This document shows, piece by piece, positions 1 to 50,943 of a stretch of DNA of 64,000 nt. Source of the stretch: Phaeosaccion multiseriatum (Eukaryota > Protista > Ochrophyta, other classes). Numbering within the stretch: position 1 is the first letter of the stretch; each line of letters starts with the position of its first letter. The DNA lies in contig OZ218956.1 in the NCBI GenBank assembly GCA_965112735.1, positions 1,674,001 to 1,738,000 of the forward strand. The letters run 5' to 3'. The position numbers were made by a program, and so were the translations under genes. Under the pieces are notes generated by a model. The model was not told where the DNA came from. It did no database searches and worked only from the letters and a program-made list of their open reading frames with translations.

Positions 1-1415
1 AGGTTGGGAGTAAGGCTGCTGGTGCCAACGCTGAGCCCGAGGACCCCATGCGTGCATGCAGCGGTGGAAACCGAAACCGTCTTACGCGCTCCGTGGCAGA
101 TGTGGGTTTGTATCTCCGCGTGTACAGCTTCCGCTACGACTCCTGGTATCGGTGCAGAGTCGTGGAGTATGATGGGAGGAGGCAGGTGAGTGAGGAGAGG
201 AAGGAAGGAAGGAAGGAAGGAAGGAAGGAAGGAAGGAAGGAAGGAAGGAAGGAAGGAAGGAAGGAAGGAAGGAAGGAAGGAAGGAAGGAAGGAAGGAAGG
301 AAGGAAGGAAGGAAGGAAGGAAGGAAGGAAGGAAGGAAGGAAGGAAGGAAGGAAGGAAGGAAGGAAGGAAGGAAGGAAGGAAGGAAGGAAGGAAGGAAGG
401 AAGGAAGGAAGGAAGGAAGGAAGGAAGGAAGGAAGGAAGGAAGGAAGGAAGGAAGGGAGGGAGGGAGGGAGGGAGGGAGGGAGGGAGGGAGGGAGGGAGG
501 GAGGGAGGGAGGGAGGGAGGGAGGGAGGGAGGGAGGGAGAGAGGAACTGTGTGCATGCGTGGACGCGTGCTGTCCGCTACTAAGTAGGGTCTCCCTTGCT
601 TATCACCTTCGCCCGGAGACTCAGACCATACCATACCATACTCAGACCAGACCAACTCAGACCAGACCATAGGGACGATCCATTCGCCTCCTCCTCCTCC
701 TCCTCCTCCTCCTCCTCCTCCTCCTCCTCCTCCTCCTCCTCCTCCTCCTCCTCCTCCGCCTCCTCCTCCTCCTCCTCCTCCTCCTCCTCCTCCTCCTCCT
801 CCTCCTCCTCCTCCTCCTCCTCCTCCTCCTCCTCTTCTTCTTCTTCTTCTTCTTCTTCTTCTTCTTCTTCTTCTTCTTCTTCTTCTTCTTCTTCTTCTTC
901 TTCTTCTTCTTCTTCTTCTTCTTCTTCTTCTTCTTCTTCTTCTTCTTCTTCTTCTTCTTCTTCTTCTTCTTCTTCTTCTTCTTCTTCTTCTTCTTCTTCT
1001 TCTTCTTCTTCTTCTTCTTCTTCTTCTTCTTCTTCTTCTTCTCCTCCTCCTCCTCCTCCTCCTCCTCCTTCGTCTTCTTCTTCACCCACGGCCATCCCCT
1101 GCCATCCCCGCCCTGCCATCCTCCTCCACTCGACAGATGCACTGCTGTCTATACGACATGGGCGGAGAGCGCCAGTGGCACGACTTGTCCACGAAACAAG
1201 TGGAGGTGGAGATGGAGGGCCGAGGAGGCCGACCAGCCATCCAAACACCCGAAGCAGGTGAGAGGGCTCATGTCGAAGGCCTCGTCAGCTCCCCGCATGT
1301 GTGCTTAGTTAAGGAGATGAAGCGCAAGCGGTCGGCCTGGTGTGAAGACGAAGGTGGACAGAGAACATCTTCGTTCAGTTGGGTATCATCCAGCGGCCCC
1401 CAATCCCTTACGTAA
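1..1415 (+). CDS. 3' part of a Tudor/Agenet-like domain protein (5'-partial; exons ~3-185 and 1137-1415)
   Basis: Phase-0 intron 186(GT)-1136(AG) joins VGLYLRVYSFRYDSWYRCRVVEYDGRRQ to MHCCLYDMGGERQWHDLSTK. This gives a Tudor-like pattern (VG-x-x-x-x-V-Y...WY-x-x-x-V-x-x-YD...H-x-x-x-YD-x-G-x-x-x-W-x-DL). The C-terminal end is uncertain (possible donor near 1258). Confidence 0.65.
199..538. repeat. (GGAA)n followed by (GGGA)n microsatellite, 5' half of intron
   Basis: Directly visible tandem tetranucleotides. Confidence 0.97.
687..1070. repeat. (CCT)n/(CTT)n microsatellite, 3' half of the same intron
   Basis: Directly visible trinucleotide arrays. Confidence 0.97.
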
Positions 1416-2258
1416 TCCAATCTTAAATCTTCCATTTGTCTGAGCAGATATCGAGATCGTGGATGTTCGAGTGCCCCGCTCGGCACCAGCCCCCGCTACG
1501 GCCTCCCCGCTCAGGTCCAGCAGCGGAAGATTTGAGTCGCCAAAAACAGCAGGAAGGAGAACGAAAACCTCAAAAAATGATCAACGGAATGACCGACGGA
1601 ACGACCGCCCTTGCACCGCAGAAGTGCAGCAACGGCCGCAATCACGCGGAAGTGGCAGTGTCCCCCCTGCCGGGCAGACAGGAGTGCCAAGAGGTGGATC
1701 AAGGAGAAGCGGCGGCAGCAGCAAGACTTCTCTCATGAGGGCCGCGGCCCTTGGCGACAAAATGGGCACCGTCCACCACGCCTATGCTCGGTGGTAGAGC
1801 AGGGAGGACGAGGGAGAGGAGGGGGGGGCTCTGGGCTCTAATAACTGTACTAAAATTAATTTTTTATGATGTTTTTTTTATAATGAATTAAATAAATAAA
1901 ACAAAAAAGCTAGGAGGGGAGGTTCTCGAGTTTCAAGTAGACCCAACCGCGCCCATGAAAGCAATCGTCCCTTCGTCAAAAGCTCGGTTAGGGGTGAATG
2001 CACGGCAAGGTAGGTACGTGGAGCGCCGCCTCCGATCATCCCACACACAGCAGCCCATCCATCTGCAGCACGCTCCACGTGACTACACCATCCAAGGTGC
2101 AGGGCATGTACTCCGCTCCATCATCTGACATGTGCAATCCGCTTCATCAAGTGACATACAACACGCCAAGTACATCGTGCTGCTACTGCTGTTGCTGCAG
2201 CAGCAGCTGCTGGAGCTGCGGTTGCTGTGCCAGCTGGTGGTGGTGCTGCTCGTGGCGG

Positions 2259-4249
2259 TTACAGGAACACTTGCAGCATTCCCGTAACCTGCCGCATGCA
2301 CAGAGGACAAAGTCTTTCGGCTTCGGCGGTCGCTCTCGCCTTCTGATCTAAGTGCTTGGTCTTGGGAAAGAGGCTGCCGGCACAGTGCTTGTGGAAGGGG
2401 CCATGGCTGCCCAAGGGGAGGGGAGGGGAGGGGAGGGGTAGAGGAGTTGGAGAGCATACATGCAAGGGTGAGGGCGAGCGCAGGAGAAGAGCGTAAAGCG
2501 GCAGTACAGCGAAGGGGTGAGAGAGGGGAGGGACGGGGGGGGGGGGATGCTCTCTCGAAACAGGAGGGGATTGAGACTGCTATCCTCCCGCCCTTGTACG
2601 CACTACACTCGTATTGGCTCTCCGCTCTCCGTGAGCAATAACCCAAGCAAAAGCAAAAAAGCGTCCCCAATTGGCAGCTACAGCCTGTGGTCTGAACGCA
2701 TAGCAGTGGCACACTTACTTACCCGCATGGGATAAACACATAGGGTGCCCCCTCGACCTCATCGAGGCATATGGAGCACTCCGTGAGCCGCCCGTCTCTC
2801 TCTTTCGGGGCCGCCTCTTTCTGCCGCCCTACCCCGCCCCCCTTCTTCCTGTCCTCGAGCGGCGGTGACTTCCCCTGTTGCTGCTGTCCCTGCCGCTGCT
2901 GCCGTTGCCCCTGCTGTTGCTGCTGCTGCGGCTGATCCGGCTGGGCGCGCTCATCACTCTTCCATCCCGGTCCTGCTACTGGTGTTGGCGGGGCAAACTC
3001 CGGCGCTTTAACGCTGAGTGTTGCTGCTGCTGGTGTTGCTGCTGCTGCTGGTGGTGGTGCTGGTGCGGTTGGGATAAACTGCGAAGCGTTTGCGCTCATT
3101 CGGGCCGCTGTCGCTACTGGTGTCGGTGGGACAAACTGCAGCGCATTCACGCTCATTGGTGCTGCTGGTGCTGCTGCTGGTGCGGATGGGACAAACTGCG
3201 CAGCATTCGCGCTCATTTGTGCCGCTGTCGCTACTGGAGCGGGTGGGACAAACTGCTGGAACTGGGCTTGCTGCTGCTGAAACAGCAGCTGCAGCCGTTG
3301 CTGGTGCTCCTGCAAGACCTGCTGCTGTATAAGCAACCGCTGTTGCTCCAACCCGTCGAGGGTCTGGGCCGTGAGGGCGCAGTTCGGGTTTTGACTGTGA
3401 ATCCGAGCCCAGTGGCTCGCGCTTTGCCCCTGATGGTTGCGCAACGTCACGTCGGCTCCGTGAGCAACCAGCTTCTGGACGACCGTACTGTGGCCTCCTA
3501 GTGCGGCGTAGTGAAGAGGTGTTGATCCCTCTTGGGTAAGGGCATTCGGCTCTGCTCCTGCTGAGAGAAGCAGAGTGGTAATGTCGCCGAAGCCTCGGGC
3601 AGCAGCCAAGTGCAGAGGAGTCATGCCCTGCATGTCTTTGGAGCTTACAAACGCCCCGTTTTCCTGTGAAGAAGAAGTAATGTGTCACGTGAGTGCGCCA
3701 CATAACATTGATCAACAGAGATGACTGACGCGACAACATGTCATCGGTAAGGGACAGCAGGCGAGTGGAGCTACGAACGCATTGGGCACGCGACGCGATT
3801 CGCTACTTACCAGAAGGACCTTGACGAGGTGAAGGGCACCAGCTGTACATGCGAGGTGCAGACAGGATTGCTGAGTGGCGTCCGCGCACACGTGCACGTT
3901 CACCCCCGCACTGAGAAGGTGTTGCGCCGTCTGCACATCCCCATGTAGACAAGCGGCATGAAGTTGCGTCTCGCCCGCGCCCGAGGATACGGCCCCTGTG
4001 GAAAAGAAAAGGGAAGAAAAGGGAAGAGGTATTGGGGGGAGAGATGAAAAAGGATTGCAATGGACGCAATGGATCGTGTACTAATTAAAGGGGCATACAT
4101 TAGTCAGGCGCACATGGGTTGGGCTACAAGGAAGGGCACATAGCTCTTCATTTTCCCCTGAAGGTGCGGTGTGTGACAAAGGGTCCGTCATTAGGAAGGT
4201 CGCCAAAAAAAAATTCACGCCCCCCCCCTCCTTCTTTCTTACATGACAT
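2259..4249 (-). CDS. Ankyrin-repeat / tandem PAM2-like / C-terminal RING-H2 protein, putative E3 ubiquitin ligase (exons ~4249-4243, 3995-3811, 3663-2723, 2406-2259)
   Basis: Ankyrin motifs GETQLHAAC, QQSCLHLAC, GMTPLHLAA, GSTPLHYAA; Q-rich linker; spliced RING CSIC...PCGHGPFHKHC...CPLC ending MRQVTGMLQVFL. Junctions are GT-AG and in phase. The start exon is uncertain. Confidence 0.85.
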
Positions 4250-8767: not shown

Positions 8768-13900
<5,133 letters not shown>

Positions 13901-14419
13901 ATTGGATTGTGGATTGTGCGGTGGGAGAGAAGGGGGGTTGGGGACTAGAACTCAAATTGTTGACAAAGCTTTTGCCATTCTTCTGCCGATTTGCCAGCCT
14001 GTTGACCGCGCGTTATCTCTTTCCGCCTCGCTGGCCCTCTACGAGGAGTGCAACCCTTCAGGTGTGCTGCTACCCACTGGCTGGACGGTACCACGCACGC
14101 GCCCACGGTCACTGGGAGGCTGCCTAGAGCCTAGAGGCGGGCTAGAGGCCGCCTAGGACTGAAAAGTGAGCGGCCTAGAGCTAGGCGTGCGTGGGGCTGA
14201 CGACGAGCAAGTTCGCTACCAATTAAGGTGTCTGGCCATGGACAGAGAGGTTCTTCATCTGCTTCTCAAAGCCACTCATGCTGTCCGACTAAAGGTAAGG
14301 GAGAGAAGAGTGTTCAAACAAGGTGTGAGCGAGGTGAGAGGGACGACTTCTTAATTGAGAGGAAGGAGAGCCGCCGTCCAAGTAAAGTTTGGAGAGAGAA
14401 GAGGGTGCAAGCAACGATG

Positions 14420-14711
14420 TCGACCCCTGACGTGATTCTGAGGGGGGCGTAATTCGTGATTCAGGCGGCCGCTGGAGGCGTGATTCGTAACTCTGTGCAC
14501 CGCTGCAAGGCAAGCACGAATACTCGGCGGATCGGCGGTGCGCCTTCGAAGGCAATGAATGACGTATAAGAGTAGTGCGTAGCTAATAAATAAGTCAGGG
14601 AAACGTGATTCGTATTCCAGCGGCCCGGAGACATGATTCGTGATTCTGTGCACCGCTACAGGCGTGATTCGTGCTTCTCGGCGCCCTCCTCAGAATCACT
14701 TCAGGGGTCGA
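14420..14711. mobile_element. MITE-like non-autonomous DNA transposon A (292 bp)
   Basis: 30-bp TIRs TCGACCCCTGACGTGATTCTGAGGGGGGCG / CGCCCTCCTCAGAATCACTTCAGGGGTCGA (2 mismatches); 6-bp TSD ACGATG at 14414-14419 and 14712-14717; internal CGTGATTC repeats. Confidence 0.9.
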
Positions 14712-14763
14712 ACGATGAGGTGCGTGAGAGAACGACTTTGTACTTGAGACGGAAGGAGAGTGG

Positions 14764-15168
14764 TCGACCCCTGACGCACTATTGAGCTATCGCTATTGCC
14801 GGCTCCAGCCGGATCGCTATTAGCTATTGATGCGTGCCAATCATATAGCGTCGACCCCTGATACACTAGCTATCGCCACATTCTCGATAGCGCGCTATCG
14901 GGCCCTGGCGATAGCGGATAGCGCGCCGGCTGGCGGATAGCACGCCCCAACATGGATAGCGGATAGCGGATAGTGTATCAGGGGTCGAATAGCGCAGCCA
15001 GTTGTTATGCTGGCTGGGGGGAAGGGAAGGAGAGAAGGGATTGAATCGATTGAAGGGTCGACCCCTGACGCAGTCGAACGCAGCCACTATCGCCCACATT
15101 CTCGATAGCGGATAGCGGATCGGCTGGCGCCGGCGATAGCGGATAGCGGATAGTGCATCGGGAGGTTT
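14764..15168. mobile_element. Degenerate/partial copies of the same TIR family (left termini at 14764 and 15058; decayed right end ~15151-15168)
   Basis: TCGACCCCTGACGCA at 14764 and 15058; shared GATAGCG repeats and a CACATTCTCGATAGCG block also present in element B. Confidence 0.65.
14851..14988. mobile_element. MITE-like element B (138 bp), apparently nested in an older related copy
   Basis: Perfect 18-bp TIR TCGACCCCTGATACACTA / TAGTGTATCAGGGGTCGA; 6-bp TSD ATAGCG at 14845-14850 and 14989-14994. Confidence 0.9.
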
Positions 15169-15269
15169 AATGTTTCCTATATTGCACCAGTGGATTTTAT
15201 TGACTTGGGGGTATAAACAACATACAGTCAGTGAAAGCAAAAAAGGAGAGAGGAAAAAAGAAGAAACAA

Positions 15270-15490
15270 GGAGGAGGAGGAGGAGGAGGAGAAGCAGCAG
15301 GAGGAGGAAGAGGAAGAGGAGGAGGAGAAGGAGGAGGAGGAGGAGAAGCAGCAGGAGGAGAAGGGGGAGGAGGAAGAGGAGGAGGAGGAGGAGGAGGAGG
15401 GGGAGGAGGAGGAGGAGGAGGAGGAGGAGGAGGAGGAGGAAGAGGAGAAGGAGGAGGAGGAGGAGGAGGAGGAGGAGGAGGAGGAAGAGG
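15270..15490. repeat. (GGA)n-rich microsatellite upstream of the carrier gene
   Basis: Directly visible. Confidence 0.9.
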
Positions 15491-15628
15491 ATCAGTGAGA
15501 CGTCTTCTCTTGTCTCTTTGACTCGCTCCTAAAATGGTTGGCTTTTGAAAGAATGAGAGTGTTAGCGTTAGCCTCTTAGCCGAGTCGAGGTCCAGCACTA
15601 CTGGAGCTTGCACCGCCAACAGCTCAGA

Positions 15629-15987
15629 ATGCCGGTGGCAGGAGGCAGATCTCGTGGCGTTCTCTCATCGGCGAACCTTTTACCCTCATCATCATCGCCA
15701 CCTTTCCAAACAAGACCGGGAGCAGGAACAGGTATTGTGTCTGGAAGGGGGCGACGAAGGCCGAGAGTCGCCCCCTTGGCCCTGACAGGGTCGTGCGTGG
15801 CGCTTGTTGTGGCAGCAGCGGCCTCCCTTGTACCAGGGATGCGTCAGCCGGTGGTGCAAGCCTTCCAACTCGCCGGGGGCGGCTCTTCGTGGCCATGCCC
15901 AGGTGCGAGGCACGCCAGGGGTGGTGGTAGAGGTAGTGGTAGCTACAGCCGGAGCAGCAGGACATGTCGTCTGGCCGCTCGGCAGCG

Positions 15988-16051
<64 letters not shown>

Positions 16052-19000
16052 CGACCACAGGCGCGGTACCAACATAGTGACAGTGAAAGGAGGTGGGTAG
16101 GACCAGAGACAGCAGTCAAATTAGGCAGAGCAAGCACAAGAGGGGCAGCAACAGGAGAAGCTGCCCCCAGAGAGCAGCAGCGGGTCGTCAGGGGCGGCGA
16201 AGGGGGTTCAAGGGCGGGGAGGCCTGTGGCATCCTCCCCCGTCGACCGCCCCAATCAGAATGCACAGTCTCGCCGCTCTCTGCTGAGAGGAGTGGCGGAG
16301 GCCTCTGCCCTGAGCGCCTTTGCTGTGGCGATAACCGCGTCTGCCGGGTTGGCTTTGGATGATGCCACGGGGTCCATCGCACGTAAGGCAACCGTTTTTA
16401 ATCATGTCTGACATGTTGTGGGAGAGGCCGAGGAGGGGGGGGGGGCGCTGGCCCCGGGGGCGCAGGCCGCGAGGGAGGCCAGGCCTGCCTCCGGTGCTTG
16501 GTAAGGGCAAGAAGTGTTCGTCGTTCTCTCCTTTCCCTGTAACTGTTGTCGTTTCCCTCTGTTGCTAACGAGGATCACTTCGCCCTGTTGGGGCTCTTCT
16601 TCCCGTCCCTGGTGTTCTGCCCCCTCTCCCACCTCGTTCGCTCACTCACTCACTCACTGGCTCACTCTACTCATTCCTGTGTAACTTCTTCTGGTGTTCA
16701 GAAGTATCTGACGAAAACGATCTGGTATGGACCTCCAAAGCTGACATCTTGGGGCGTGTTCGTGCCGGCACCAGCGAGGGCAAGCCTTCACCCAAGAAGA
16801 ATACGGCCTACAGCCCCCGCTTTGTGGCCTACCTGGCCAGGTCAGTCAGAAGGAGGAGGAAGAAGAGGAGGCGGAGGAGGAGGAGGAGGAGGAGGAGGAG
16901 GAGGAGGAGGAGGAGGAGGAGGAGGAGGAGGAGGAGGAGGAGGAGGAGGAGGAGGAGGAGGAGGAGGAGGAGGAGAAGGAGGAGGAGGAGGAGGAGGAGG
17001 AGGAGGAGGAGGAGGAGGAGGAGGAGGAGGAGGAGGGAGAGGAGGAGGGAGAGGGGAATAGGGGAGGGGGGAGCAAGGCGAATTGGTTGTGTTGGTTTTG
17101 TGCTTCTCCATGCTGTCTTTGTCTTGCCATGATAGACACCCTGATGATACCATGGTACTCCGAAGCAAACAGTCAAAGAAGAGGGGGTGAAGGAAGAGGC
17201 CATGCCTATGTAATGCACTGCGCTGTCGCTTCTCTTACCTGCCCCGTTCGACTGCTTGCTTGGCGCAGGTTCCTCATCAACTTTGACCCTGCGCTGGCGG
17301 TGCTGTGGGACCGGGAGGGCAGCGCGTTGTCCTTGAAACTCACCGCGACGCAGGTGAAGATGGAGAAAGCGGGAGGAGGGAGTGGGGACTGACCAAGTTG
17401 GACTGTGTTCGACTTTGTTCGACTTCGTGTATATGTTGTGTGTGTGTGAGAGTGTGTGTGTGTGTGTGGTGTGTGCGTGTGTGTCGGGGGGACGTATGTG
17501 TGCGTGTGTGTGTCCTACTTTCGTGCAGATCCACTAACATGGATTCATGAGCATCCTCGTCTCACGCTGTCTTGTCCGTTCGTCCCTCCCTGCCTGCCTC
17601 CGTCCTCCCCTCCCTCCCTCCCTTCGAAAGGTGGAAGAGAAGCGCAGGAGGCAATTCGCGGAACTAGCGCAGGCCGTGGAAGTGGGGCTGCTGGACTTCC
17701 AGGACAAGACAGGGGTGAACGCGCTCTACTCCCTGCTGCGCTCTCGCTACGTGAGGGACCTGGAGGCCGAACAGCAGTTGGTGATTCTCTTTACACTCAT
17801 CAAGGGCGAGCTCCAGCCCTCCGACAAGATCCTTCGGAGCCTCGGAGAGATTGACAACGCCTCGGTAGACACGGTGCAGGTGGTTGTGAGCGGCTCAGGC
17901 TACACAGGCAGGGTGCCTGTAGTGACCATCACCCCCCCGGCAGCCCGTCAGTACCGGCCAAACTCGAATACCCGACAAGACAGGGATATTTCGAATCGTG
18001 CGGTGGCCGTGGCGCGCATGAGAGAGACAGGAGAGATTGGCGAGTTACGTCTAACGAGGGGAGAAGGCTATGTGTTTGACACCAAGACCAGACCCATTGT
18101 GCGGATATCCCCACCGCCCCCACCCACAATGCGGGGAGGAGGGCAGGGGAAGGCCGTGTCAGCGCAAGGAGAAGGGCCGATTGGGAAAGTGGGGGTGCAG
18201 GCGCAGGCGGAGGTGGTGCTGGGGAAAGGGGGAGAGCTTCAGGGGCTGGTGTTGACCAACAGGGGCTCTGGGTACGACTCGCTCCACCCCATTACTGTCG
18301 AAGTGGTGGGGGTGACTGCCGAAGACGAAACGGGTGTAGAGTCTGCCACACAGAGCAGCAGCAGCAGCAGCAGCAGTGGCACCACATTGGCAGCAGGAGG
18401 TGCGGCGTCGTCCTCCGATGCCGCGAAGGCAAATGCCATCGATGCAGCGGCTGTGGCCTCCGCTGGCGCCGTTGGCAGCGAGCTGGGTGAGGTACCCGTC
18501 GGCGTGGAGGTGGAGGCCTTTCTCAATAGAATAGTGGACTGCGTGGATGTACTGGACCCCGGGTCGGGCTACGCGTCTGCCGCTCCCGTGGACGTGACCA
18601 TCGAGTCTCCGGCGGAGTGCGGGGCTCTCGCTGGTGCTGGTGGATCGGACGGCGAAGGCAACTCCGGTCAAAGTACGGCCTTTGCGGTGGCGTTTCTGCG
18701 ACGTAACGGTGCGGCAGGCGCAGATACCAAGAGGACCGCAGGCCGGCCGCTGCCGTCGTCCTCCTTCTCCGCCCAACTCACTCAGCTTTTGCCTCGCACG
18801 CTGGTCAACACCGTCACCATTGACGAGGACGGATACTTTACCTCTTTGGAGCTGGACGACGCTCTCCCCGCCCCAGTGGGCTCGTCCATGCCGTACGACC
18901 CTGTGTTTGGCCCCATTGGCCGCTCTCCTCTGGAAAGGGAGACAGAGCTGAGCGGTAGGCAGTACCTCTCCCTTGCTGCGGCAGGAGCGGCTTGTAACGG

Positions 19001-19307
19001 CATCGTGCGGCTCGTGCTTCATCCTGTAGATCTCGTCAAGACGCGGGTTCAGGCCAGCAGGGAGGATGAGAAGCCGGGTCTGCTCAAGGCCGCTCTCGAA
19101 CTCATGGACGAGCCGGGCTGGCAGCTGCTGCGAGGGGTGGAGGTGTCCATCATACTTGGGCTGCTGCTGGGCGGTCTTGGCTTTGGCTGCAACGAGCTCT
19201 TTCGCAGGAAGCTGTGTGAGCTGGCGGGACCCGATACTGCGCTGGCCTACCAAGTTCCGATTATCCTGCTGGCCAGCGGCGCCTCACAGGTAAGAGGAAG
19301 GCGAGCA

Positions 19308-19344
<37 letters not shown>

Positions 19345-20391
19345 CTACAGGAGAGAAAAACAATGGTGGCGGGGAGGGGGGGGGGAGTCAGGGATACACC
19401 CCGTCCTCTGAGTATTGCACAGACTTTTGTCTTTCTCTGGGTCTACGAGACTTACTTTGTTAGTTTTGGGGGTGGGCCCGATTGGAAAGAGGGAGAGACA
19501 GAGCGGCTTTCTGTGCCCTCTCTTGTTCTTCTCTCTCTCCTTCCCCAGAGAACCACGAGGGTTTGCACTACCGTATGCTTCCACCCCCCTCCCCCGCCCC
19601 CGCATCAGTTGAAGCCTCGCCTCACTTTCGAAGACTTCACTTCCTCCCTCTCTCCCTCCATCCATCCCTCCCTATCTCTCTTCCTTCCCATCCCATCCCT
19701 CCCTCCGTCTGTCCCTCCCTCTCTTCCCTCCCATCCCCCCGTCCCTCCGTCCGTCCCTCCCTCAATTCCCTCCCATCCGTCCCTCCCTCCCTCCCTCCCT
19801 CCCTCCCTCCCTCCCTCCCTCCCTCCCTCCCTCCCTCCCCTTCTTCTCTTCACTCTCATCCCTCCCTCCCTCCCTTTCTTCCCTTCCATCCGTCCTTCCC
19901 TCTCCTCCCTCCGTCCCTCCCTCCCCTCCCCCCCCCCCTTCCCCCCTCCCTCTCCTATCTACCTTCCTCTCTCCTTCCTTCTCGTCGTGCATCTCTGCTC
20001 TCAGGTCATCAACTCTTTCGTGGTGTGCCCCTTTGAGTCCGTGAGAATTCGAGTCGTCACAGGCCCCGGCAACTTCAAACTAGGTCAGTTGTTGATAGTC
20101 GCCTGTCGCCTGTTTTAGCCAGCACAAAGCGCGGACACACAACTGCGTGCTCGCTTGGCCTTGGCCTTTATTTCTGCTCGAGAGAGGGCGTGCTTTGCTG
20201 CTGCAAAACCAAAACCAAAAACAAAAACAAAAACAAAACCAGCACGTTCCCTCTCTCCCTCTCTCTCTCACTCCGTCGCTGGAATGGCCTCTCTTTCCAC
20301 ATTCTCTCTCCCTCACTCTGCCTCTTCGTTCCTCTCCCTTGTCTGTCTCTCTGTCTGTCCTTGTTCTATTTACTCTCCTACGATCCGGAAA

Positions 20392-22210: not shown

Positions 22211-33946
<11,736 letters not shown>

Positions 33947-50225: not shown

Positions 50226-50566
50226 GTCCTGGACACCAGACCGGGAGCGGCAGCAGCCCACAGCGAGACCCGCAAGGAGCGGCACTATGCCGGCACCTAC
50301 GGCCGAGAGCGTGTTCGCCTCACCACCTTCGCCATCGAGACCCACGCACGACTCGGCGCACAGGCGCAATCACTCCTACATGCACTCGCCGAGCACGTCG
50401 TCTCCCGCACGGGCCGCACCGGCTCCTCCACCACCAAGGGCCACGTCCTGACCAGACTTCGCCGTCTCGTCAGCTGCAGCAACCAGATGTGGCTCTCGGA
50501 GCGAGACCGCGCCTTCCTGGGTCGGCTCCTGCACTCCCCCTCCCCGACCAAGAGGGGGAGTAACCG
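50226..50566 (+). mobile_element. 5'-truncated non-LTR retrotransposon remnant (C-terminal half of a restriction-like endonuclease, CRE/R2-type)
   Basis: Open frame with no upstream start codon: PGAAAAHSETRKERHYAG...TTFAIETHARLGAQAQSLLHALA...RLVSCSNQ. It matches the RLE pattern A..E..K..(K/H)Y...(P)xxxETxGxxG...S...Q. Confidence 0.7.
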
Positions 50567-50840
50567 TCGGCCCCCCGCGGGGCTTCTCGGGCTCCGGGCT
50601 TCTGGGCCATAGCCCCCTCCAGGCTTCGGGCTTCTGGCCGCAGGCCAGCGCGGGCTTCTGCGCCGCAGGCCAGCGGTCTGGGCTTCAGGCTTCTCAGGGG
50701 GGCTCAGGGGGGCTCACGGGGGGGGGGGGAATTATGCCAGGCTTCTGGCCGCAGGCCAGCCCCGGGCTTCTTGCTTCCGGCCGCAGGCCGCCTCAGGCTT
50801 CTGCTTATCGGGGGGCCAGAGAAGCCCCGCGGGGGGCCGA
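50567..50840. mobile_element. MITE-like element C (274 bp)
   Basis: Perfect 22-bp TIR TCGGCCCCCCGCGGGGCTTCTC / GAGAAGCCCCGCGGGGGGCCGA; 6-bp TSD TAACCG at 50561-50566 and 50841-50846; internal GGCTTC(TGGCCGCAGGCC) repeats. Confidence 0.9.
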
Positions 50841-50943
50841 TAACCGTGAATAACCGGCCCAGCCTCCCCCCCCCCTAGAATATGTCAATAAAAAAATACC
50901 CAGCCCCACATCTTCCTCCGCCTTTTTTCTTTTTTCCTTTGGC

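What the first reader, a model, noticed from the sequence alone, without database searches (positions are those of the whole stretch)
14414..15168. Nest of miniature transposons with TCGACCCCTGA termini and 6-bp TSDs
Seen: two complete elements (14420-14711, TSD ACGATG; 14851-14988, TSD ATAGCG) share an 11-bp terminus but have unrelated interiors built from different short repeats (CGTGATTC versus GATAGCG). Two orphan left ends lie at 14764 and 15058. All are in the Hsp70/carrier divergent region, and every left terminus is preceded by G. Known: 6-bp TSDs are uncommon among cut-and-paste superfamilies (Tc1 TA, PIF 3 bp, hAT 8 bp, Mutator 9 bp). I do not recognise TCG...CGA termini. Inference: non-autonomous members of a possibly undescribed DNA transposon group with an insertion hotspot.
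Basis: partly seen in the sequence, partly recalled or inferred. Interest (0 to 1): 0.8.

Follow-up and report, generated by a model that had tools for sequence, protein, structure and literature searches.

The report
Cluster of miniature DNA transposons, 6-bp duplications
A 750-base stretch between two genes holds a pile-up of small, non-coding jumping-gene relics (MITEs) that share the same 11-base ends and a 6-base insertion scar; they are real and belong to high-copy families, but I could not confirm which enzyme moves them.

Summary
[quoted passage not shown] There is also a left-end fragment at 14764 and a third element at 15058-15169. That third element is not an orphan end: its right tip has decayed. 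A related element lies at 50567-50840.

Inverted ends plus a 6-bp TSD occur 3 times in the window against 0.07 expected. An uninterrupted copy of a local 93-bp tandem repeat acts as an empty site for the first element. Contigs from four public runs show the families are repeated tens to probably thousands of times, with flanks diverging exactly at the tips.

None of the elements codes for protein. Their interiors are family-specific 7-8-mers, mostly in direct orientation and often doubled.

They are best read as MITEs moved in trans by a cut-and-paste transposase. The 6-bp TSD and TCG tips fit none of the groups I could check in papers (P, hAT6, IS3EU, Dada), but Repbase and Dfam were not available.

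This scan has already noted the same group many times elsewhere in this genome, including 8.4-kb elements with TCGACCCCTG ends and a P-element-like transposase. I could not reach or test that link. Moderate interest.

The parts
14420..14711 (+). MITE 1 (292 bp). Tip TCGACCCCTGA; 30-nt inverted ends at 14420-14449 and 14682-14711; about nine CGTGATTC motifs, all on the + strand except the one inside the right end; low-copy middle around 14511-14604.
   Evidence: (I1, D3, D5); read depth
14414..14419 (.). Left copy of the 6-bp TSD ACGATG of MITE 1; the right copy is at 14712-14717.
14712..14717 (.). Right copy of the TSD ACGATG of MITE 1.
14280..14372 (.). Host 93-bp tandem unit 1, uninterrupted. 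It acts as a local empty site for MITE 1: unit 2 is 14373-14419 plus 14718-14763.
   Evidence: 71/90 identical and colinear once MITE 1 and one TSD copy are removed; score 84 against shuffles 18 +/- 5. Single-copy depth.
14764..14850 (+). Left-end fragment of an older element (TCGACCCCTGACGCACTAT...). Its interior carries CGCTAT-type motifs, and it has no matching right end or TSD. MITE 2 sits at its right edge.
   Evidence: (D4, I2, I4); about 12-19x the single-copy baseline
14851..14988 (+). MITE 2 (138 bp). 18-nt perfect inverted ends and GATAGCG 7-mers in doublets and triplets. TSD ATAGCG at 14845-14850 and 14989-14994.
   Evidence: (I3). As single-stranded DNA it folds to -41.8 kcal/mol, z -5.3.
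15043..15061 (.). Possible remnant of a right end (GAATCGATTGAAGGGTCGA, 9 of 11 tip bases) abutting MITE 3 and sharing its TCGA. Uncertain.
   Evidence: I8, I13. An abutted right-end/left-end junction also appears in a contig from elsewhere in the genome (table 5c). It could be chance.
15058..15169 (+). MITE 3 (about 112 bp), same GATAGCG family as MITE 2. Intact left tip, decayed right tip, no TSD recognisable.
   Evidence: (D6, D8, D9). Loose ends of other copies continue ...AGGGGT[C/T]GA at 15159.
50567..50840 (+). Related element (274 bp). Tip TCGGCCCCCCG, 22-nt perfect inverted ends, about ten GGGCTTCT motifs (nine on the + strand). TSD TAACCG at 50561-50566 and 50841-50846. It ends 14 bp before the open frame that holds the TRM13 zinc finger.
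13628..13900 (-). Context: first coding exon of the Hsp70 gene (profile positions 1-71). The cluster lies 520-1270 bp upstream of its start codon.
17547..19463 (+). Context: long open frame on the + strand with a mitochondrial-carrier domain, part of the carrier gene on the other side of the divergent intergenic region. I did not verify the gene's start; a first-reader note (s1-360495) places it near 15629.
   Evidence: Mito_carr domain; note s1-360495

Best explanation
These are miniature inverted-repeat transposable elements (MITEs): short, non-coding passengers of cut-and-paste DNA transposons.

**Shown here**
- Each element ends in inverted repeats that begin TCG(A/G)CCCC.
- Each intact element is flanked by an exact 6-bp duplication of the target.
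- Element 1 interrupts one unit of a local 93-bp tandem repeat whose sister unit is uninterrupted.
- Element 2 sits inside or beside an older fragment of a related element.
- The same families occur many times elsewhere in the genome, with flanks that diverge exactly at the tips.

**Inferred**
- A transposase made elsewhere binds the family-specific 7-8-bp motifs (GTGATTC, GATAGCG, GGCTTCT; often doubled at a 7-bp offset) that fill the subterminal regions.
- It pairs the two ends, cuts at the conserved tip, and reinserts with cuts staggered by 6 bp.
- The shared 11-bp tip combined with different interior motifs suggests several related transposases that share cleavage-site contacts but have diverged in DNA-binding specificity.
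- Because the interior motifs run in one direction, the two ends are not equivalent.

**Not tested here**
- Notes from this scan say the same genome holds 8.4-kb elements with TCGACCCCTG ends, 31-bp inverted repeats, 6-bp TSDs and a P-element-like transposase. That is the likely driver, at least of element 1, whose inverted ends are 30 nt long.
- The clustering in divergent promoters may reflect a preference for open chromatin near gene starts.
For: - Inverted ends and TSDs.
- Three pairs observed against 0.067 expected.
- Tip enrichment, 7 matches against 1.9 expected.
- Local empty site, 71/90 identity and colinear, score 84 against 18 +/- 5.
- Contigs from 4 runs (2 studies): summed depth over the element ends is about 14-60x (element 1 family), and about 125-900x and 1300-3000x (GATAGCG family) the single-copy baseline of the neighbouring bins. 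Loose ends of other copies stop at ...TCAGGGGTCGA or its CpG-decayed forms TCAACCCCTGA and AGGGGTTGA, then diverge. Joints skipping 155-191 bases inside element 1 indicate shorter relatives.
- No Pfam match for open frames over the elements.
- Motif maps.
- No small-RNA gene at the sites.
- Gene context.
- Repbase places non-autonomous elements with the same TSD length and matching terminal positions 1-11 in one superfamily (PMC4455052).
- MITEs that share only their termini with a P-element master are documented (BuT5, PMC3698922).
- Leads only: scan notes on the autonomous element.
Against: - No transposase was found in this window, and none could be fetched, so the driver is unverified.
- A 6-bp TSD is outside the 7-9 bp reported for the P superfamily.
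- No empty-site allele and no insertion polymorphism was seen. All junctions that contigs covered are occupied, and the two samples may be the same strain.
- Depth summed over contigs is not a copy number. GATAGCG 7-mer arrays elsewhere could inflate it.
- Two of the five elements lack a TSD.
- Only five insertion sites, four of them clustered, are too few to show promoter targeting.
Confidence: 0.8

Rival explanations
1. They are MITEs, but of a superfamily already known to make 6-bp TSDs (the hAT6 branch of hAT, IS3EU or Dada), or of some other driver, rather than of the P-like element noted elsewhere in the genome.
For: 6-bp TSDs are documented for hAT6, IS3EU and Dada. The P superfamily is reported with 7-9 bp. 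I could not examine any transposase.
Against: - IS3EU ends read TAYGG..CCRTA in the described families; here they read TCGAC..GTCGA.
- Dada elements mostly insert in multicopy small-RNA genes; none is present at these sites.
- hAT ends usually begin YARNG (my own knowledge, not tested).
- Scan notes report an autonomous element with the same first 10 terminal bases and the same TSD length (untested).
Confidence: 0.12
2. The clustering is not a targeted hotspot. It results from tolerance of insertions in intergenic DNA, together with nesting into earlier copies, local hopping and local duplication.
For: Element 2's target ATAGCG lies in an older related fragment rich in that motif. The region already contains a 93-bp tandem duplication and another high-copy repeat at 14017-14181.
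Against: Elements 2 and 3 differ by several indels and substitutions, so they are not recent local duplicates. Element 1 belongs to a different family and has its own TSD. The separate element at 50567 also lies directly upstream of a gene's open frame.
Confidence: 0.4
3. The structures are not mobile elements but chance or structural palindromes, for example hairpin-forming repeats made by replication errors.
For: The elements fold into strong hairpins. Two of the five lack TSDs.
Against: Three exact 6-bp TSDs against 0.067 expected. There is a local empty site. Hundreds to thousands of contigs match, with flanks diverging at the tips.
Confidence: 0.02

Closest known systems
BuT5, a MITE mobilised by a divergent P element in the Drosophila repleta group (PMC3698922)
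   Same: A short non-coding element that shares only its terminal sequences with a transposase-bearing master. Its interior is unrelated, it is flanked by TSDs, and it is more numerous than the master.
   Different: BuT5 is about 1 kb, has very short inverted ends and makes 8-9-bp TSDs. The elements here are 110-290 bp, have 18-30-nt inverted ends starting TCGA, make 6-bp TSDs and are filled with short direct motifs. The master was not examined here.
8.4-kb P-like autonomous elements of the same genome (scan notes s1-338371, s1-350129, s1-360290; unchecked by me)
   Same: They are reported to have TCGACCCCTG termini, 31-bp inverted ends (element 1 has 30 nt) and 6-bp TSDs.
   Different: They carry a transposase gene and a second gene; the elements here carry none. 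Sequence identity of the ends could not be measured with the tools available.
Superfamilies known to make 6-bp TSDs: hAT6, IS3EU, Dada
   Same: TSD length.
   Different: The termini differ from the IS3EU ends (TAYGG..CCRTA). There is no small-RNA gene target as in Dada. No transposase is available to place the elements in hAT.
Subterminal repeat arrays of Ac/Ds and En/Spm, and classic plant MITEs such as mPing (my own knowledge)
   Same: Multiple short transposase-binding motifs inside the ends; a non-autonomous element amplified to high copy; frequent location near gene starts.
   Different: Different termini and TSD lengths (8, 3 and 3 bp). Here the interior motifs are almost all in one orientation and occur as 7-bp-offset doublets.

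Membership tests
MITE (miniature inverted-repeat transposable element) | Short (tens to a few hundred bp) with terminal inverted repeats | tested here: met
   Lengths 292, 138, about 112 and 274 bp; inverted ends of 30, 18 and 22 nt
MITE (miniature inverted-repeat transposable element) | Flanked by target-site duplications of fixed length | tested here: met
   Three exact 6-bp TSDs against 0.067 expected pairs; two decayed or truncated copies lack them
MITE (miniature inverted-repeat transposable element) | No coding capacity | tested here: met
   No Pfam match for the open frames over the elements
MITE (miniature inverted-repeat transposable element) | High copy number in the genome | tested here: met
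   207-3177 contigs per run match the 1.4-kb stretch. Summed depth is 14x to over 1000x the single-copy baseline, and flanks diverge at the tips. Depth is not an exact copy number.
MITE (miniature inverted-repeat transposable element) | Termini shared with an autonomous element that supplies the transposase | not testable with these tools
   No transposase in the window. The rest of the genome cannot be read. Only scan notes are available.
P superfamily | Mobilised by a P/THAP9-type transposase | not testable with these tools
   Rests on unchecked scan notes
P superfamily | TSD of 7-8 bp (9 bp in BuT5 and its master) | tested here: not met
   6 bp in all three intact copies; literature values
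IS3EU | 6-bp TSD with long inverted ends finishing TAYGG..CCRTA (as described for the fungal families) | tested here: not met
   TSD length fits, but the ends are TCGAC..GTCGA
Dada | 6-7-bp TSD, with many families inserted specifically in multicopy small-RNA genes | tested here: not met
   TSD length fits. No Rfam family in 13500-16000 and no tRNA gene in the whole window. Rfam was not run over the 50567 site.
hAT (hAT6 branch) | hAT transposase; 6-bp TSD in the hAT6 branch | tested here: inconclusive
   TSD length fits. No transposase is available. The termini do not look hAT-like, by my own knowledge only.

The most novel reading that the evidence does not exclude
These elements are the abundant non-autonomous arm of an uncatalogued, P-related lineage of cut-and-paste transposons. 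The lineage would be defined by TCG(A/G)CCCC tips, 6-bp TSDs and one-directional arrays of doubled 7-mers. Several sub-lineages would keep the same cleavage tip but have evolved different DNA-binding specificities, and integration would be steered to gene promoters.
Probability: 0.35. Interest if true: 0.7.

Novelty: new variant of a known kind. Interest (0 to 1): 0.45.

Why it matters
MITEs are ordinary in kind. These combine ends and a TSD length that fit no superfamily I could check, and they are numerous.

If their driver is the P-like transposase noted elsewhere in this genome, they offer a natural panel of substrates. They have the same 11-bp tip and three different sets of binding motifs. 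That panel could be used to separate cleavage-site recognition from end binding in a poorly known transposase lineage.

Their position in two divergent promoters, one belonging to an Hsp70 gene, also makes them candidates for changing gene regulation. Their high copy number means they must be masked and named in any annotation of this genome.

Tried and rejected
- **Transposase in the window:** 107 open frames of 170 aa or more were scanned against Pfam. No transposase family appeared among the 25 families shown, out of 54 matched.
- **Metagenome scans:** the 24-nt end of element 1 found nothing. The generic tip pair with a 100-130-nt gap gave one hit, L001. It has no TSD, looks like GC-rich bacterial coding DNA and matches the one or two hits I estimated by chance, so I rejected it.
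- **Earlier findings by sequence:** blank.
- **Organism identity:** two exact look-ups of the intronless PPR protein found no record. The organism stays coded as 'organism A'.
- **Literal search of papers for the termini:** only cloning primers.
- **Paper search combining transposase, NHL, PHD finger, P element and Ulp1:** none.
- **Relaxed scan for CpG-decayed copies with TSDs in the window:** no further copies.
- **The 1-mismatch tip at 22320:** no partner and no TSD; taken as chance.
- **Reading 14764-14988 as one element** (19-nt ends, 89% complementary): rejected, because its flanks GAGTGG and ATAGCG do not match.
- **Empty-site joints in reads** (14419 to 14712, or 14850 to 14989): none among those listed.

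Full report
**What is there**

The stretch 14414-15169 lies between the first exon of an Hsp70 gene on the minus strand (13628-13900; Pfam HSP70 positions 1-71) and a carrier gene on the plus strand (Mito_carr domain). I did not verify the carrier gene's start; a first-reader note puts it near 15629.

The 11-mer TCGACCCCTGA occurs six times in the 64-kb window, all within 14420-15068: four as left ends and two as right ends. With up to one mismatch there are 7 matches against 1.9 expected, and no shuffle reached 7.

- **Element 1 (14420-14711, 292 bp):** 30-nt inverted ends, 93% complementary, flanked by ACGATG on both sides.
- **Element 2 (14851-14988, 138 bp):** 18-nt perfect inverted ends, flanked by ATAGCG on both sides.
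- **Left end at 14764:** starts an 87-bp fragment with no partner.
- **Left end at 15058:** starts an element of the same family as element 2. Its right end is recognisable but decayed, and it ends near 15169.
- **Related element (50567-50840):** tip TCGGCCCCCCG, 22-nt perfect inverted ends, TSD TAACCG. It ends 14 bp before the open frame that holds the TRM13 zinc finger.

**Is it more than chance?**

A whole-window scan for inverted ends of at least 11 nt (at most 1 mismatch), 40-1000 bp apart, with an exact 6-bp TSD returns exactly these three elements. The simulated mean is 0.067 per window. All five left ends are preceded by G, which I estimate has about a 0.002 chance at this base composition. 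A relaxed scan that allows CpG-decayed tips finds no more copies in the window.

**Evidence of insertion**

The host DNA around element 1 is a 93-bp tandem repeat. Unit 1 (14280-14372) is uninterrupted. Unit 2 is 14373-14419 plus 14718-14763. Once element 1 and one TSD copy are removed, unit 2 aligns colinearly with unit 1: 71 of 90 positions identical, score 84 against 18 +/- 5 for shuffles. This works as an empty site within the same locus.

Element 2's target ATAGCG lies at the edge of the older 14764 fragment. The cluster is therefore at least partly nested.

**Copies elsewhere**

Contigs from four public runs (two studies, one coded organism) were laid on 13900-15300 at 80% likeness. The unique flanks give a flat single-copy baseline of about 22, 101, 521 and 98 in the four runs. 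Summed depth relative to that baseline rises as follows:

| Region | Depth relative to baseline |
|---|---|
| Ends of element 1 | about 14-60x |
| Element 2 | about 125-900x |
| Right half of element 3 | about 1300-3000x |
| Middle of element 1 | near baseline |

Between 207 and 3177 contigs per run match the stretch. The tool warns that this is not a copy number, and GATAGCG arrays elsewhere may inflate it. Still, the families are clearly repeated many times.

Loose ends show other copies running to ...TCAGGGGTCGA, or to TCAACCCCTGA and AGGGGTTGA, and then diverging. This places the element boundaries exactly at the tips and shows CpG decay of the TCGA. Joints that skip 155-191 bases inside element 1 indicate shorter relatives.

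Every junction that contigs covered is occupied. No empty allele was seen. The samples may be one strain, so this says little about current mobility.

**Anatomy**

None of the open frames over the elements matches Pfam. Element 2 folds as a strong hairpin. The interiors are built from family-specific short motifs:

| Element | Motif |
|---|---|
| Element 1 | CGTGATTC |
| Elements 2 and 3 | GATAGCG |
| Element at 50567 | GGGCTTCT |

In elements 1 and 50567 about nine copies lie on the plus strand, and only the copy inside the right inverted end is reversed. The two ends are therefore not equivalent. Reading the sequence, the motifs often occur as doublets offset by 7 bp. The left and right subterminal blocks of element 1 are direct repeats of each other (D5).

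**How it most likely works**

The inverted ends, TSDs, insertion, multiplicity and lack of coding are shown. The mechanism is inferred. A transposase supplied in trans binds the subterminal motifs, pairs the ends, cuts at the conserved tip and integrates with a 6-bp stagger. An identical 11-bp tip combined with different motif sets points to several related enzymes that share cleavage contacts but differ in DNA-binding specificity.

**The driver**

No transposase is present in this window, and none could be fetched. Two metagenome scans gave nothing real.

This scan's earlier notes on other parts of the same genome describe 8.4-kb elements with TCGACCCCTG ends, 31-bp inverted repeats, 6-bp TSDs and a P-element-like transposase with an extra propeller and a PHD finger. 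They also contain several first-reader notes on non-autonomous TCG...CGA elements with 6-bp TSDs and doubled subterminal motifs. I reuse this as the most likely driver but did not test it.

Under Repbase's rule, the same TSD length plus matching terminal positions 1-11 places non-autonomous elements in one superfamily (PMC4455052). On that rule, elements 1 and 2 and such a master would be filed together.

**Comparison with known groups**

- **P superfamily:** TSDs are 7-8 bp, and 8-9 bp for the MITE BuT5 and its master (PMC3698922). Here they are 6 bp.
- **IS3EU:** makes 6-bp TSDs but ends TAYGG..CCRTA (PMC12730594).
- **Dada:** makes 6-7-bp TSDs, mostly in small-RNA genes (PMC8869645). Rfam found nothing in 13500-16000 and no tRNA gene lies in the window.
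- **hAT6:** makes 6-bp TSDs, but membership needs the transposase.
- **Literature:** no searched paper prints these termini.
- **Not available:** Repbase and Dfam.

**Hotspot**

Four elements in 750 bp, with only one more in the remaining 63 kb, is far from uniform. Both sites lie directly upstream of genes. Promoter preference is known for P and Mutator elements (cited in PMC9977147). With five sites I cannot separate targeting from nesting, local hopping or tolerance of insertions between genes.

**Unresolved**

At 15043-15061 a sequence resembling a right end (9 of 11 tip bases) abuts element 3's left end and shares its TCGA. A similar abutted junction occurs in a contig from elsewhere in the genome (table 5c). 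It may be chance or a recurrent end-to-end arrangement.

**Verdict**

This is a real cluster of MITEs from at least three families of one group. The novelty of the group is plausible but unproven here, and the group has already been flagged repeatedly by this scan on other DNA of the same genome.

Noticed in passing
window 14017-14181: Another very high-copy repeat in the Hsp70 upstream region, built from GCCTAGA/GCCTAGAGGCC units. Summed contig depth is several hundred to a few thousand times the single-copy baseline. Other copies continue beyond 14181 with more such units. I found no TCG tips and no TSD here.
   Followed up: partly
window 14280-14763: A single-copy 93-bp tandem duplication of host DNA (units about 79% identical). 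Its second unit carries MITE 1.
   Followed up: yes
window 15048-15068, and a contig elsewhere in the genome (table 5c, 14988 to 14780): A right-end-like sequence directly abutting a left end, sharing the palindromic TCGA (GGGTCGACCCC). It could be a recurrent end-to-end arrangement of these elements.
   Followed up: partly
window 15269-15491: Long (AGG)n microsatellite, about 74 units at 88% matches, just upstream of where a first-reader note places the carrier gene start.
   Followed up: no
loose ends at 15085 and 15159: Many other copies of the GATAGCG family have tips TCAACCCC and GGGGTTGA instead of TCGACCCC and GGGGTCGA. This is CpG-to-TpG/CpA decay, which would fit cytosine methylation of these repeats.
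   Followed up: no
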